DNA of 64,000 nucleotides. Source: Dendrobates tinctorius. Taxonomy: Eukaryota. Location: positions 17,050,001 through 17,114,000 of the forward strand of contig NW_027361870.1 in the NCBI RefSeq assembly GCF_039654945.1. The letters are read 5' to 3'. The notes beneath the pieces were generated by a model that worked only from the letters and a program-made list of their open reading frames with translations, ran no database searches and was not told the DNA's origin. A program made the translations under genes and the position numbers. Of the stretch, positions 31,864 to 64,000 are shown one piece after another (the stretch's first letter is position 1; every line of letters starts with the position of its first letter).

Positions 31864-32410
31864 TCAAGAAGTATAATTTCTTCTTGCGGAGAATGATATG
31901 CTATGCATGTCGAGATGAGGAGACTTAAAGCCGCAATGCCCCTTTGGGAAATATGCCAATTATGCAAATTGTCTCTTCAGAGAGGAAGAGGACTAGAACT
32001 CTAGTGCCACCTATTGGAAGTAGCAATCCTAAAAGTCACTGTTGACCCTTTAACGAGCCTTGTCACATGACTTAGGAAACAAGCCAAGCCAGAATCTGAA
32101 GAGACAATTTGCATAATTAGCATATTTCCCATATTGCGGCTTTAAGTCTCCTCATCTCGACATGCTTAGCATATCATTCTCCGCAAGGAGAAATGATACT
32201 TCTTGGACATCGGTCAGATGCCTCTCACAGCCAAACCAGATCTCACACTTTGCACTGACGAGGAGCAGTACCCCGAAACACAGTGTCTGCAAATTGAGAT
32301 TCTGGCTTGGCTTTTATCCTAAGTCATGTGACAAGGCTCGTTAAAGGGTCGACATTGACTTTTAGGATTGCTGCTTCCAATAGGTGGCACTAGAGTTCTA
32401 GTCCTCTTCC
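31864..32410 (+). mobile_element. Penelope-like non-autonomous fold-back retroelement with a hammerhead ribozyme
   Basis: 14-bp TSD TCTCCTCTTATTAT at 31850-31863 and 32411-32424. The left half is an inverted copy of two blocks of the right half. Confidence 0.8.
32240..32300 (+). ncRNA. Minimal type I hammerhead ribozyme
   Basis: TTTGCA-CTGACGA-GGAGCAGTACCCC-GAAA-CACAGTG-TC-TGCAAA: stem I, CUGAnGA core, stem II with one mismatch, GAAA, palindromic stem III, and GUC site (cleavage after 32287). Confidence 0.8.
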
Positions 32411-60147: not shown

Positions 60148-61158
60148 TAAGAGAATCCTTATGTGACACACAATTGAATGATATCATTATATGATATCTC
60201 AAAAAAGGGGGGACAGATTCCCTTTAAAAGACCTTTTTAAATGGGATTTTCCAGCAGCATTTAAAAAAAAAAAATAAAGCAAACATAACTTTTTTCACCA
60301 TCACCGGGTCCGGCTCTGATTATTTGTTGCTGTTCCTAGTCTCTTATTGAGCCACTGATTGGCTGCAGCTCTGTCAGCGTGATGTCAGCTGTGCAGACAA
60401 TAACAGACACCAGAATTAGTGGCAGAGATGTTGTGCTGGACCTGGGAAGGGGGGAGTAGTGATGGGTTTATTTTTTTTATAAACAAATTGCAGCCAGGGG
60501 ACAGAGGTTTTTTCAAAATGGTAAACCCATTTAAGGAAAGTAGACTCTAAAAGCATTCATGTATTTAAAATAACAAACAGAGCAGGTACCTTCCTGACAC
60601 TTTTTTGGTCTCAATGTTTTGGCTGCAGTGGTCCATCATGTTGACAGGTCACATAACCGCTACAGCCAATCATTGAGCTTAGCAGCTGGCACAAGTAATA
60701 GCAGGTGGAGATGCGAAAAACTGTTGGGAAGAGAAAACTGCATTGTGTGCGGAATAGAAGCTGTACTGATAAGAGCAATGAGTACAGCCACATCCTGGAT
60801 GCACGCATACCTAGCGTTCAGCCTATAATAACAGGGAGGGTCAATCCCAGAAGAGAAAGTTCTGAAACTTGGATCAGGCAGCAAACAGCATTTCAGGGGT
60901 TTTGAAAGTGAATAATGGAATGAAGATTGCTGGCTGAAACTTTGCGCAACATATAACTAACATATATCAAAAACATGTTTTTCATCTCAGAGGTTTCCAT
61001 AACCTTTTAGAGGACTAAATTTGACTTATCTGTGGGCATTCTTGGTCCCGCTCGTACTCAGACATGCGTCTTTCTCCAGGCCCTGCTGTGTTATTTCCGA
61101 TTTGTAGCATTATTTTCCTTTCATTTATTTTTTGTTTTTGTGTAGATTGATCCAAGTG

Positions 61159-61344
61159 ATGGGACTAAAATCAATATGGAAGAGCTACAAAGTTTTGATT
61201 GTTATGGGGACAAGTCTTGGAGTAATACACTGGGGCTGGATTAACATGCAGTCAAACCCAATATTTCATCCTGAGGGTCAAGGTCGATTACCATCCATTT
61301 TTCGGTTTCTTTCAAGTGAAGAAACGGATCCAAAAGACAAATAA
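61159..61344 (+). CDS. 61-aa single-TM microprotein, homolog of the MKKS upstream ORF protein uMKKS1 (exon 61146-61366)
   Basis: MGLKSIWKSYKVLIVMGTSLGVIHWGWINMQSNPIFHPEGQGRLPSIFRFLSSEETDPKDK; acceptor TTTTTGTGTAG|, Kozak GTGATGG, donor TGG|GTAGGT. Aligns with recalled human uMKKS1 (..LWRDYKVLVVMVPLVGLIHLGWYRIKSSPVF..). Confidence 0.85.
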   Translation: MGLKSIWKSYKVLIVMGTSLGVIHWGWINMQSNPIFHPEGQGRLPSIFRFLSSEETDPKDK

Positions 61345-61421
61345 TGGTGTGATTGTGGTCCTTTGGGTAGGTGTCTATTCTATCCATCTGTATTTCCAGC
61401 TTTTACATACCATGCTCCAAA

Positions 61422-61484
61422 AATAAACATCAGGACATTCGTTTGCACATATTCTATGTTTAAAATTAAGAAATCTGTAATAAA
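61422..61484 (+). terminator. Two AATAAA polyadenylation signals just inside the intron after the uMKKS1 exon
   Basis: AATAAA at 61422-61427 and 61479-61484. Confidence 0.45.
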
Positions 61485-63376
61485 GCTGCATGTGCATGGC
61501 CATATTATAGCCCATTATGGACAGACTTGGAAAAAGGCACTCCTAGAGATATTTACTGAACCTGTACATACATATTAAGTTTTTTATCCTGTCAATTTAA
61601 ATATGTACAAATCGTGACATCAGCCTTATATAAGATACTATTCTCATATTTAAGCATTAGAGAGAATAGCTCCAAACATGGTGAAACCTCCTCCATACAA
61701 CTCTTATCTGGTGCATGAGGCATCAAGTCGTTCTGCTCAATTGTAAAAAAATGTTTATTATGATTTGTTTATTGAAATCCAATTGACAAATTATCTGGCT
61801 CCCAGGTCAGCTTACAAGTTGTTACCTCACTTTCACCCACTCTTTAAATGGGTTCTCCAGGAATGTAATATAACTGTCCCAGCCCCGTAACTCAGACGGC
61901 AACCCGTCCTAATCACGTGTGTCAGTCGGCAACCCGTCCTAGTCACGTGTGTCAGGACGGGCTGCAATCTGAAGAAACATTGCTCCCGAGACCTGTGTCT
62001 CAACTGACAGAGGAGCTGTATTGTAAATGCATGTTTTTCCTTGAGACCAGGAGAAGAGAAAAATCTCTACTCTGCTCACTGTGCACGTAGGACTGAGGCT
62101 CGAGAAAAAGAACTTTTGTGATCAGTTAGCTGAGGAGAAGAATTATTTTTTCTCCTGTCACAACCCTTCTCCAGTAGGTGAGCTTACAATAGAGCTCCTC
62201 TGTCACCTGAGGCACAAGTCTCAAGAGCTGTTTTTCTTCATACTACAGCATGTTCTGACATGTTACTAGGATGGGCTGCCCCCTGTTGTTGTTGATGTGC
62301 GCACTGCATCATGTAGTCTACAAGGTTACTGAGACCAGGGATTGGCTGCAGTGTTCACATGCTATAGTCATAACCTCTCGGCTGCAGCCATGACAGCGAG
62401 CCGGGCTTGAGTACCACAGCGTAATTAAGGCTGATTTTATTTTACACACAATAAAATCCTTAAAGCTGGAAGCCTCCTTTAAGACTTTTCAGAGGATTTC
62501 TCCTAACTGGATATATTACTTATTAGGGCTTCTGGACATCATAGGGCCCCCCAGCAAAGGCACATGCCTGCCAAACGGAGACCAAAAGGACGGTTGGCTT
62601 CCTTCTAGTGGATGGGAATACTGGGAAAGCTCCTGGTGTGTCCTAGACAAAGTGCACTTGCCTTTTAAGGTGCAGTCAGACGTCAATATGAATCAGACCG
62701 CAATGCCTGGACTGGCCGACACTCTTTCCGACCCGAGCATTACGGCTTCGTAGGAATATATGCAGCTGTCACGCTTGGGTCGGGAGAGCCACCGGTCAGT
62801 CTGTGCACTGCTTCCCGATTTTGATCCGATTTATACGTCCACCTGACTGCGCCCTTACTCTGCGTTTCCTATGTAGTGGCTATAATGTGCAGCTGCCTAC
62901 ATCATTCCCTCGTCATACCAGCAGATGGCTAGGGGTTTTAGCAGCAATTCTGCAGGGTGCCTCATAGTACAGAAGGGGGTTGTCCAGGTCTCAGCCTTGT
63001 AATTGTTATTCATTTAAGTTCTAGATCTCAGTAGGTACTGACATACAATATTTTTCCTTCAAGGGATCTTCCCATCTATAAAATGTATGCATATCGTTGA
63101 ATATTCCATCACTTTGATTCTTATGGATACGACCTCTGGGGCTTGCACTGATCCTCTGTGATAATTTATTACCTCAGCCCCTTTACAGTTTTCTGTGCAG
63201 AGCGGCACCTTCTATTCTAGTGAGTAGTCTGGTGTGCTGCTCTACAGAAAATCAGAGTGAAATTTCCATAGTGAAAGTCAGCATTGCAGCTTTTTATATT
63301 TTTAGAATTGTTGGGGTCCCAGAGATCAGATCTCCAGAATGGTTAATTCTAATGATCATTTTACAAATTCCTTTAA

Positions 63377-63788
63377 AGCACCACTCCAGCGTTTTTCCAC
63401 ACTGGAGTGGCGCTTTACATGTAAGCACCCTTCCCCCATTCTTATACTCATCCTCTGGTGGCTTCACCTTTTACCGATGCTGCTCCTGTCCTGCGACATC
63501 ATCTTGTGAGCTCAGCTTCTAACTGGCTGGAAGTCAGAAGCTACGTCACAGGAGCTCAATGCAAGTCTATGAGAGGGAGAATGGGGCCAGAACCAGGCGG
63601 TCATAGACTTGTATTGAAAAGTGGCCTCCGGCGTGCTCCATGAAGCACTGGAGCAGGCGGCAAGTCAATTTTTTTTGCGGGGGAGCAAAGCTGGAAAAGG
63701 AAGAAGGCAGCAGAATATATGAGGCAGGGAACTTACATTTAAAGTGCCACTCCACGATGCAATAAAAAAAAAACTCTTGAGTGGTGCT
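63377..63788. mobile_element. TTAA-target MITE (T2/Kolobok-like)
   Basis: TTAA|AGCACCACTC ... GAGTGGTGCT|TTAA. Confidence 0.75.
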
Positions 63789-63906
63789 TTAAGCAAAATT
63801 CACAATAGTTTCCATATTTCAGAATGAAATTGAATGTAATTGCCATTTTTTCTTTTCCCCCAGACTTTTTAAACTATCCTCTCCTTGACCTGGAAGCCGA
63901 GGTGCC

Positions 63907-64000
63907 ATGAAGCCAAAATCATTTTTGCGGAGGAATTGGTTCTGGGTCGCTGGGATATCCTTTCTAGGCATTCACTTTGGGACATATTTTATTCAAAGAG
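63907..64000 (+). CDS. N-terminal 31 aa of a second microprotein, homolog of uMKKS2 (exon starts 63864 and runs off the window)
   Basis: Acceptor TTTTCCCCCAG|; GCCATG start; MKPKSFLRRNWFWVAGISFLGIHFGTYFIQR. Aligns with recalled human uMKKS2 (MKNTSWIRKNWLLVAGISFIGVHLGTYFLQR). Too short for the ORF track. Confidence 0.87.
   Translation, partial: MKPKSFLRRNWFWVAGISFLGIHFGTYFIQR

What the first reader, a model, noticed from the sequence alone, without database searches (positions are those of the whole stretch)
61159..64000. The two microproteins look like ancient paralogs sharing an intramembrane histidine motif
Seen: uORF1 SIWKSYKVLIVMGTSLGVIHWGWINMQ and uORF2 SFLRRNWFWVAGISFLG-IHFGTYFIQ share one plan. 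Each has a short basic/aromatic N-terminus, a hydrophobic helix, LG(x)IH(W/F)G, and Q five residues after that G. The recalled human peptides also keep G(L)(I/V)HLG. Inference: they arose by tandem duplication and are co-translated to form a heterodimer. One His per helix could bind a heme or metal, as the two single-helix cytochrome b559 subunits do. I know of no description of this; it is speculative.
Basis: inference. Interest (0 to 1): 0.8.

Follow-up and report, generated by a model that had tools for sequence, protein, structure and literature searches.

The report
Two MKKS-leader microproteins share histidine
These are a frog's copies of two already known small mitochondrial-membrane proteins encoded ahead of the MKKS gene; both keep one histidine at the same depth of their membrane helix in every intact vertebrate copy examined, but common ancestry is only weakly supported and pairing or heme binding remains untested.

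Summary
Window 61159-61344 encodes a 61-aa peptide. Window 63907 onward encodes a peptide cut by the window end, 50 aa in full. Both carry the quoted motifs.

They are orthologues of the known MKKS 5'-leader microproteins uMKKS1 and uMKKS2 (NCBI LOC128706665/LOC128706666 homologues). Assembled contigs of four runs join the two exons directly, so both ORFs can sit on one spliced mRNA.

The histidine is invariant: 120/120 uMKKS1 sequences and 39/39 intact uMKKS2 sequences, including lamprey and hagfish. The other motif parts fail. Q is K in 105/120 uMKKS1, and the G after His is kept in only 19/40 uMKKS2.

An ungapped register does hold: L-x3-G-x6-H-x3-[YW]-x2-[KQ]. In both families it lies on the most conserved helix face.

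Paralogy is marginal:
- BLASTP finds nothing.
- hhalign gives P 0.002-0.009 and probability 4-16%.
- Composition-preserving shuffles reach the observed score in 5-12% of trials.
- A His-anchored permutation gives P about 0.005-0.01, but the anchor was chosen after the fact.

The one complex prediction gave no verdict, and heme binding is untested. In three teleosts the pair is a stand-alone bicistronic gene with no mkks within 9-10 kb, so the two are kept together independently of MKKS.

Verdict: known proteins, with a plausible new hypothesis that is not demonstrated.

The parts
61146..61366 (+). Exon carrying uORF1. The acceptor AG is at 61144-61145 and the donor GT at 61367-61368.
   Evidence: Sequence read. 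Contigs of runs X2 and X4 begin matching at 61144, and contigs of four runs leave the stretch at 61364.
61159..61344 (+). uORF1, the uMKKS1 orthologue: 61 aa plus a TAA stop.
   Evidence: Family search finds 120 vertebrate homologues, E down to 1e-35. AF2 predicts a helix at residues 3-32.
61228..61230 (+). Codon of His24 of uORF1 (CAC).
   Evidence: His is present in 120/120 family members.
61367..63863 (+). Intron between the two microprotein exons (GT..AG). It contains repeat-like sequence.
   Evidence: The joint 61364->63862 (skips 2497) is seen in contigs of all four runs laid, within 2 nt of the canonical sites.
63864..64000 (+). Start of the exon carrying uORF2. Beyond the window the same exon carries the MKKS start codon.
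63907..64000 (+). uORF2, the uMKKS2 orthologue: the first 31 of 50 codons, cut by the window end.
   Evidence: The full ORF is L001:12749-12901. Homologues run from hagfish and lamprey to mammals. AF2 predicts a helix at residues 11-48.
63973..63975 (+). Codon of His23 of uORF2 (CAC).
   Evidence: His is present in 39/40 sequences; the one exception is a decayed copy.

Best explanation
The two ORFs are this frog's orthologues of the known MKKS 5'-leader microproteins uMKKS1 (about 61-65 aa) and uMKKS2 (about 50 aa). Each is a single-pass, N-terminally anchored membrane peptide. The human counterparts are reported in mitochondrial membranes. They sit on consecutive exons of one transcript, 65 nt apart after splicing, so they are made from the same mRNA. 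In both, the invariant His lies 13 residues after the basic N-terminal boundary, about one to two turns before the end of the hydrophobic stretch. It sits on the most conserved helix face together with a conserved Gly, in the shared register L-x3-G-x6-H-x3-[YW]-x2-[KQ]. I read that face as a helix-helix packing surface with one polar contact, used inside a mitochondrial membrane assembly, either with each other or with a common partner. This step is inferred, not shown. Common descent by tandem duplication is plausible (about 40%) but not demonstrable from peptides this short.
For: Identity: homologues are named 'LOC128706665 homolog', 'LOC128706666 homolog' and 'PNAS-117'. The uORF2 cluster holds human V9GZ13. 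The gene order uORF1 - uORF2 - Cpn60_TCP1 protein of 572 aa is found in frog, turtle, rhea and electric ray. Literature: uMKKS1 and uMKKS2 are 63 and 50 aa and lie in mitochondrial membrane fractions (PMC11837024). Both uORF peptides localise to mitochondria (PMC7066179). The 63-aa peptide is enriched at the outer-membrane cytosolic face, and its knockout lowers respiration (PMC13577902). Same mRNA: the joint 61364->63862 is seen in four runs. His invariance and per-column counts. Conserved face: uORF2 conservation is helically periodic (P 0.006), with face S5 R8 L12 G16 F19 H23 T26 Q30 K34. The uORF1 face is F6 Y10 L13 G17 G21 H24 Y28 K31 (P 0.077). Register: hhalign aligns 25-26 columns without a gap, His on His. 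The i/i-1 offset is the best ungapped offset, and the other 24 columns beat 99% of within-segment permutations. Coupling independent of MKKS: eel, snailfish and minnow keep the pair 450-850 nt apart with no mkks within 9-10 kb. The only His-less uORF2 sits behind a frameshifted, His-less uORF1 remnant.
Against: No localisation or interaction data exist for this frog. The packing-surface reading is inference from conservation only. uORF1 is conserved around almost the whole helix, and its periodicity is not significant. The complex prediction gave no verdict. Profile similarity is reached by 5-12% of composition-preserving shuffles. The anchored test conditions on a His alignment chosen after the fact, and its null breaks the generic aromatic belts of membrane helices. 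By language-model features uORF2 finds nothing near uORF1 (best score 0.79, noise level).
Confidence: 0.6

Rival explanations
1. One reading: the two peptides are ancient tandem paralogues that are co-translated and form a parallel heterodimer through the His/Gly face.
For: They have the same architecture, the same His position (24 vs 23) and the same ungapped register. They are adjacent ORFs on one mRNA. The pair is retained together without mkks in teleosts. Both ORFs have decayed together in one copy. hhalign P is 0.0017-0.0093.
Against: hhalign probability is only 4-16%. Shuffle controls reach the observed score in 24/200 and 13/280 trials. BLASTP finds nothing. HMM cross-hits are at E about 0.8 among a few thousand ORFs. 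No uORF1 is found in 32 kb upstream of lamprey uORF2. The uORF1 family may reach arthropods (an Atlas lead), which would give the two families different ages.
Confidence: 0.3
2. One reading: one His per helix ligates a heme or metal between the two helices, as in cytochrome b559 (PsbE/PsbF).
For: There is one invariant His per helix, each 13 residues from the N-side boundary. The two would lie at equal depth if the helices are parallel.
Against: There is no sequence relation to any heme protein. Pfam gives no match except chance hits in single members, and the PDB search gives nothing. No paper found reports a cofactor. The human 63-aa peptide is reported at the outer membrane facing the cytosol, not in a redox complex. 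A conserved interfacial His next to Trp/Gly is equally explained by helix packing or lipid-headgroup contact.
Confidence: 0.04
3. The two peptides are unrelated. The shared plan comes from common constraints on short N-anchored mitochondrial membrane peptides: basic flank, aromatic belts, small residues. The matching His is coincidence or functional convergence.
For: Composition-preserving shuffles often reach the observed hhalign score. There is no pairwise similarity. The C-terminal tails are unlike each other: PEPGIVAYV in uORF1 against a basic AKSS-rich helix in uORF2. The nearest language-model neighbours of uORF1 are other small single-pass mitochondrial proteins.
Against: An invariant His inside a membrane helix is uncommon. 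Here it falls at the same position in two adjacent ORFs, and W, L, G, [IV] and [YW] also coincide in one ungapped register (anchored P 0.005-0.011).
Confidence: 0.45
4. The ORFs are only translational brakes on MKKS, and their peptide sequences do not matter.
For: Upstream ORFs in the MKKS leader repress the main ORF in reporter assays (Akimoto et al. 2013, as summarised in PMC11837024).
Against: Amino-acid conservation runs from cartilaginous fish (uORF1) and cyclostomes (uORF2) to mammals. The pair persists in teleosts with no mkks downstream. The human peptide is abundant by mass spectrometry and its knockout has a phenotype.
Confidence: 0.03

Closest known systems
uMKKS1 / micro-MKKS63 (human TrEMBL Q9HB66, 'PNAS-117', NCBI LOC128706665)
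   Same: Orthologous by sequence: the core YKVLIVMG..LG.IHWGW is near-invariant. It has the same place in its own exon upstream of uORF2 and MKKS, the same length class and a single N-terminal helix.
   Different: In this frog and other neobatrachians the C-terminal PEPGIVAYV motif of most vertebrates is replaced by RLPSIFRFL, and position 31 is Q instead of K. Nothing is known of its expression or location in frogs.
uMKKS2 (human TrEMBL V9GZ13, NCBI LOC128706666)
   Same: Orthologous by sequence (62-90% identity to other frogs, with profile hits down to lamprey and hagfish). It is 50 aa, lies in the same exon as the MKKS start, and has one long helix.
   Different: Tetrapods have H-x-G-T-Y where ray-finned fishes have H-L-[AS]-T-W.
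Cytochrome b559 (PsbE/PsbF) of photosystem II
   Same: Two small single-helix subunits encoded side by side, each with one His in the helix.
   Different: There is no sequence or profile relation. In b559 the His lies near the N-terminal end of each helix, whereas here it lies near the C-terminal end. No cofactor is known, and the compartment differs.
Other single-pass mitochondrial microproteins (UQCC6/BRAWNIN, SMIM20/MITRAC7, SMIM4, NDUFB1, CEBPZOS, mitoregulin)
   Same: Similar size, a single helix and a mitochondrial membrane setting. They are the nearest named neighbours of uORF1 by language-model features, at 0.82-0.85 (lead level only).
   Different: No detectable sequence homology, and none is known as a conserved pair on one mRNA with a shared His.

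Membership tests
uMKKS1 family (LOC128706665 homologues) | Significant sequence similarity over the whole peptide | tested here: met
   E 1e-23 to 1e-28 to named frog homologues. A profile search finds 120 vertebrate members.
uMKKS1 family (LOC128706665 homologues) | Located in the 5' leader of mkks, upstream of uORF2 | tested here: met
   Order uORF1, uORF2, then a 572-aa Cpn60_TCP1 protein in the same record. The exons are joined in contigs of four runs.
uMKKS1 family (LOC128706665 homologues) | Mitochondrial membrane localisation | not testable with these tools
   Known only for the human peptide (PMC13577902, PMC7066179).
uMKKS2 family (LOC128706666 homologues) | Significant sequence similarity over the whole peptide | tested here: met
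   E 1e-14 to 1e-24 to frog homologues. The profile finds 28 further cluster representatives, including lamprey, hagfish and ray.
uMKKS2 family (LOC128706666 homologues) | Lies just upstream of the MKKS start codon in the same exon | tested here: met
   Stop at L001:12901 and MKKS ATG at L001:13094.
One superfamily containing both peptides (paralogy) | Profile-profile similarity beyond what the composition of membrane helices gives | tested here: inconclusive
   hhalign P 0.0093 and 0.0017, probability 4.4% and 15.5%. Segment-preserving shuffles reach the observed score in 24/200 and 13/280 trials. The His-anchored permutation gives P 0.011 and 0.005. BLASTP finds nothing.
One superfamily containing both peptides (paralogy) | Motif residues conserved in both families | tested here: inconclusive
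   His: 120/120 and 39/40. G after His: 119/120 against 19/40. Q: 12/120 against 36/40. L-G before His: 118 and 107 of 120 against 18 and 27 of 40.
Cytochrome b559-like bis-His heme heterodimer | Sequence membership in PsbE/PsbF or another heme-binding family | tested here: not met
   No Pfam hit for either peptide beyond single-member chance hits. No PDB relative.
Cytochrome b559-like bis-His heme heterodimer | Physical heterodimer of the two helices | tested here: inconclusive
   Complex prediction gave 'no answer' (score 0.03, mark 0.34). This is not evidence either way.
Cytochrome b559-like bis-His heme heterodimer | Bound heme or metal | not testable with these tools
   Needs spectroscopy or metal analysis.
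TOM7 family (Pfam PF08038) | Score at or above the Pfam gathering threshold, shared by family members | tested here: not met
   12.4 bits against a cut-off of 27, E 0.13, and only 1 of 38 uORF1 orthologues hits it.

The most novel reading that the evidence does not exclude
The two peptides are ancient tandem paralogues kept on one mRNA for more than 450 million years because they assemble as a parallel heterodimer. Its two equally deep histidines jointly bind a heme or metal ion in a mitochondrial membrane. This would be an animal counterpart of the two-subunit cytochrome b559 design.
Probability: 0.04. Interest if true: 0.85.

Novelty: already known. Interest (0 to 1): 0.4.

Why it matters
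The MKKS leader is one of the few truly polycistronic vertebrate mRNAs. Its 63-aa product was recently reported as the main protein output of the locus in human brain, with an effect on respiration (PMC13577902). No molecular mechanism is known for either peptide.

This work adds three concrete handles:
- A single invariant membrane histidine in each peptide, on a conserved Gly-containing face and in the same register. This names the mutants to make.
- Evidence that the pair is kept together even where MKKS is no longer downstream (teleosts). This argues that the two peptides work in one pathway, independently of MKKS.
- A bounded answer on ancestry: common descent is possible but cannot be claimed from sequence statistics.

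None of the papers I could search mentions similarity between the two peptides or a cofactor.

Tried and rejected
1. Complex prediction on uORF1 + uORF2 returned 'no answer' (ipSAE 0.03, controls not run, alignments not used). It counts neither for nor against binding.

2. The Pfam TOM7 hit of uORF1 (E 0.13) is found in only 1 of 38 orthologues and is rejected as chance. The single PsbY and XPC-binding hits are rejected likewise.

3. PDB sequence searches with both family profiles at E<=10 gave only a chance match to ribosomal protein S5.

4. The 125-aa 'fusion' protein of Liparis tanakae (P0151) looked like a natural uORF1-uORF2 fusion. The contig shows that uORF1 has its own stop and that the gene model splices over about 490 nt, so it is an annotation artefact. 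P0155 is similar.

5. Atlas look-alikes of uORF2 scored at most 0.79, which is noise level.

6. The lamprey locus has uORF2 beside JAG1. It shows no uORF1 in 32 kb upstream and no MKKS exon in 10 kb downstream. One locus is too little to date uORF1.

7. SMIM26: UniRef labels one Amphiprion uORF1 orthologue 'Small integral membrane protein 26'. From memory, SMIM26 resembles uORF2 around its helix. I had no tool-supplied SMIM26 sequence, and the papers held print none, so this was not tested.

No human contig was fetched. The hominid uORF2 cluster was seen only as protein records.
Full report
**What is there**

Window 61159-61344 (+) is an ATG-to-TAA ORF of 61 codons, reading MGLKSIWKSYKVLIVMGTSLGVIHWGWINMQSNP.... 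A second ORF starts at 63907 (+) and runs off the window end after 31 codons, reading MKPKSFLRRNWFWVAGISFLGIHFGTYFIQR.

The window's own genome record is GCA_039654945.1, JAYMGB010000102.1. Fetched through the exact uORF1 protein, it shows that uORF2 is 50 aa. It also shows that a 572-aa Cpn60_TCP1 protein (MKKS) starts 192 nt after the uORF2 stop, in the same exon. The His codons are 61228-61230 and 63973-63975.

**Transcript structure**

Assembled contigs from four public runs of a close relative (kind guessed as RNA) all join 61364 to 63862, skipping 2497 nt. That is within 2 nt of a GT at 61367 and an AG at 63862-63863. Two contigs begin matching at 61144, next to an AG acceptor.

So the uORF1 exon (61146-61366) is spliced directly to the uORF2 exon (63864 onward). 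In the mRNA the uORF1 stop and the uORF2 AUG are 65 nt apart. Contigs cannot give strand or expression level. They show only that the joined form exists.

**Identity**

- uORF1 hits frog proteins named 'uncharacterized LOC128706665 homolog' (E down to 1e-28).
- With a family profile it hits 120 proteins from chimaera and rays to birds, some named 'PNAS-117'.
- uORF2 hits frog 'LOC128706666 homolog' proteins.
- An exhaustive profile search added 28 cluster representatives. These include Lampetra fluviatilis, Myxine glutinosa, Narcine bancroftii, and the hominid cluster that contains V9GZ13.
- Turtle, rhea and electric ray have the same order: uORF1, uORF2, MKKS.

These are the known uMKKS1 and uMKKS2 peptides. 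The literature reports the following:
- They are 63 and 50 aa in human and lie in mitochondrial membrane fractions (Akimoto et al. 2013, as summarised in PMC11837024).
- They served as mitochondrial positive controls (PMC7066179).
- The 63-aa peptide is the dominant product of the locus in human brain. [quoted passage not shown]

None of the 11 papers that mention these peptides was found to discuss similarity between them, a histidine, or a cofactor. I opened only part of that set.

**Conservation of the motif**

uORF1, n=120:

| Position | Count |
|---|---|
| H24 | 120/120 |
| W7, L13, I14, M16, W27 | 120/120 |
| G26 | 119 |
| L20 | 118 |
| G21 | 107 |
| Position 31 | K in 105, Q in only 12 (frogs) |

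uORF2, n=40:

| Position | Count |
|---|---|
| H23 | 39/40 |
| Q30 | 36 |
| G21 | 27 |
| G25 | 19 |
| L20 | 18 |

The single His-less uORF2 (P0157/P0167) lies on Logan contigs. There it sits about 75 nt behind a frameshifted uORF1 remnant whose own His is replaced by Tyr, downstream of an unrelated SH2-domain ORF. It is a decayed copy, so every apparently intact uORF2 keeps the His.

But 'LG(x)IH(W/F)G...Q' as a whole is not a family-level motif.

**A better-defined shared plan**

hhalign aligns the families without any gap, uORF1 position i with uORF2 position i-1, His on His. Column scores are positive for:
- W7/W6
- L13/L12
- V15/V14
- G17/G16
- I23/I22
- H24/H23
- G26/G25
- Y28/[YW]27
- [LIM]30/[MIL]29
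- K31/Q30

This offset is the best of all ungapped offsets.

Conservation in uORF2 is helically periodic (permutation P 0.006). Its conserved face is S5, R8, L12, G16, F19, H23, T26, Q30, K34. The most conserved face of uORF1 is F6, Y10, L13, G17, G21, H24, Y28, K31, with weak periodicity (P 0.077) because nearly the whole helix is invariant. The two faces coincide as L-x3-G-x6-H-x3-[YW]-x2-[KQ].

AF2 with the family alignments gives one helix at 3-32 plus a short helix at 46-55 for uORF1 (pLDDT 64). It gives one long helix at 11-48 for uORF2 (pLDDT 78). In both peptides the His is 13 residues after the basic N-side boundary.

**Is it more than chance?**

- Pairwise BLASTP: nothing at E<=100.
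- hhalign on two alignment sets: score 16.1, P 0.0093, probability 4.4%; score 20.3, P 0.0017, probability 15.5%.
- hhalign P-values are optimistic for membrane helices, so I shuffled the uORF2 alignment columns.
  - Full shuffles reach the observed score in 6/200 trials.
  - Shuffles that keep the N-flank, helix and tail compositions reach it in 24/200 and 13/280.
- With the His alignment fixed and the other 24 columns permuted within segment, P is 0.011 and 0.005.
  - This test has two weaknesses. The anchor was chosen after seeing the data. The null also destroys the generic aromatic belts of membrane helices.
- Cross-family HMM hits are at E about 0.8 among a few thousand ORFs.
- By language-model features uORF2 has no neighbour above 0.79.

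My reading is that common ancestry is plausible, at about 40%. The identical architecture, adjacency and His position help the case. But it is not demonstrated.

**Functional coupling**

In eel, snailfish and minnow the two ORFs lie 450-850 nt apart, each with its own stop. No MKKS-like sequence lies within 9-10 kb. In eel and minnow the next gene is a convergent Steroid_dh gene.

The pair is thus retained as a unit without MKKS. This argues against a purely regulatory role and for a shared function. The joint decay of both ORFs in the extra copy points the same way, though it would also be expected of any pseudogene.

The one complex-prediction job returned no verdict.

**Mechanism**

Shown:
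- two co-transcribed single-helix peptides;
- an invariant His at equal depth on the conserved, Gly-bearing face of each helix.

Inferred:
- that face is a helix-helix packing surface with a polar contact, inside a mitochondrial membrane assembly;
- the partner may be the other peptide (about 25-30%) or a common third protein.

Speculative, at about 4%: bis-His ligation of a heme or metal as in cytochrome b559. The geometry allows it only for a parallel dimer, and nothing else supports it. There is no relation to heme families, and the reported location is the outer membrane.

**Novelty and score**

The peptides, their polycistronic arrangement and their mitochondrial location are already known. 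The frog copies are ordinary orthologues.

What I did not find described is:
- the invariant His/Gly face shared in register;
- the stand-alone teleost gene;
- the paralogy idea.

These make a cheap, testable hypothesis for two proteins without a mechanism, which gives moderate interest.

No N stretch was filled. No human contig was fetched or compared. Read laying was given 3001 letters.

Noticed in passing
L003:10001-10826; L007:2411-3271; L008:10001-11235: In three teleosts (Synaphobranchus, Liparis, Phoxinus) uORF1 and uORF2 form a stand-alone two-ORF gene. No MKKS-like sequence lies within 9-10 kb downstream, and in eel and minnow the next gene is a convergent Steroid_dh gene. The polycistronic MKKS leader seems to have become a separate gene there.
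   Followed up: partly
L005:1-42336 (Lampetra fluviatilis): Lamprey uORF2 (32172-32333) lies downstream of a JAG1-like gene, so synteny with the gnathostome JAG1-MKKS region is kept. No uORF1-like ORF was found in the 32 kb upstream, and no MKKS exon in the 10 kb downstream.
   Followed up: partly
Turtle uORF1 orthologue P0035 (Atlas search): The third-nearest Atlas cluster is a 58-aa 'hypothetical protein' family, mostly from Arthropoda (score 0.94, 207 of 256 features shared). The uMKKS1 family may therefore predate vertebrates and MKKS. The sequences could not be retrieved.
   Followed up: no
L009:1677-2152 and L010:1191-1666 (Logan contigs, organism unknown): This is a decayed copy of the spliced uORF1-uORF2 unit. 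uORF1 is frameshifted with His replaced by Tyr, and uORF2 has His replaced by Leu. It lies downstream of an SH2-domain ORF and is possibly a processed pseudogene.
   Followed up: partly
window 61342-61352: The uORF1 stop overlaps an ATG (TAATG) that opens a two-codon ORF (M V stop). It may be chance, or it may bear on reinitiation before uORF2, which lies 65 nt downstream in the mRNA.
   Followed up: no
L001:13028-13033 (just beyond the window end): An AATAAA lies between the uORF2 stop and the MKKS start. This fits the alternative polyadenylation reported for the human leader, which yields short mRNAs that encode only the microproteins.
   Followed up: no
window 61880-62020: Inside the intron there are two direct copies of a unit of about 27 nt (…GGCAACCCGTCCTA.TCACGTGTGTCAG), followed by a partial inverted copy. 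Contigs of all four runs pile up here with many loose ends, as expected for a dispersed repeat or small transposon.
   Followed up: no
P0061 (Amphiprion uORF1 orthologue): UniRef names it 'Small integral membrane protein 26'. Whether SMIM26 is related to either peptide could not be tested, because no SMIM26 sequence was available from a tool.
   Followed up: partly
window 61159-61341 versus other vertebrates: Neobatrachian frogs have replaced the otherwise conserved C-terminal PEPGIVAYV motif of uMKKS1 with RLPSIFRFL-type sequence. Ascaphus, Pelobates, Xenopus and salamanders keep the motif.
   Followed up: partly
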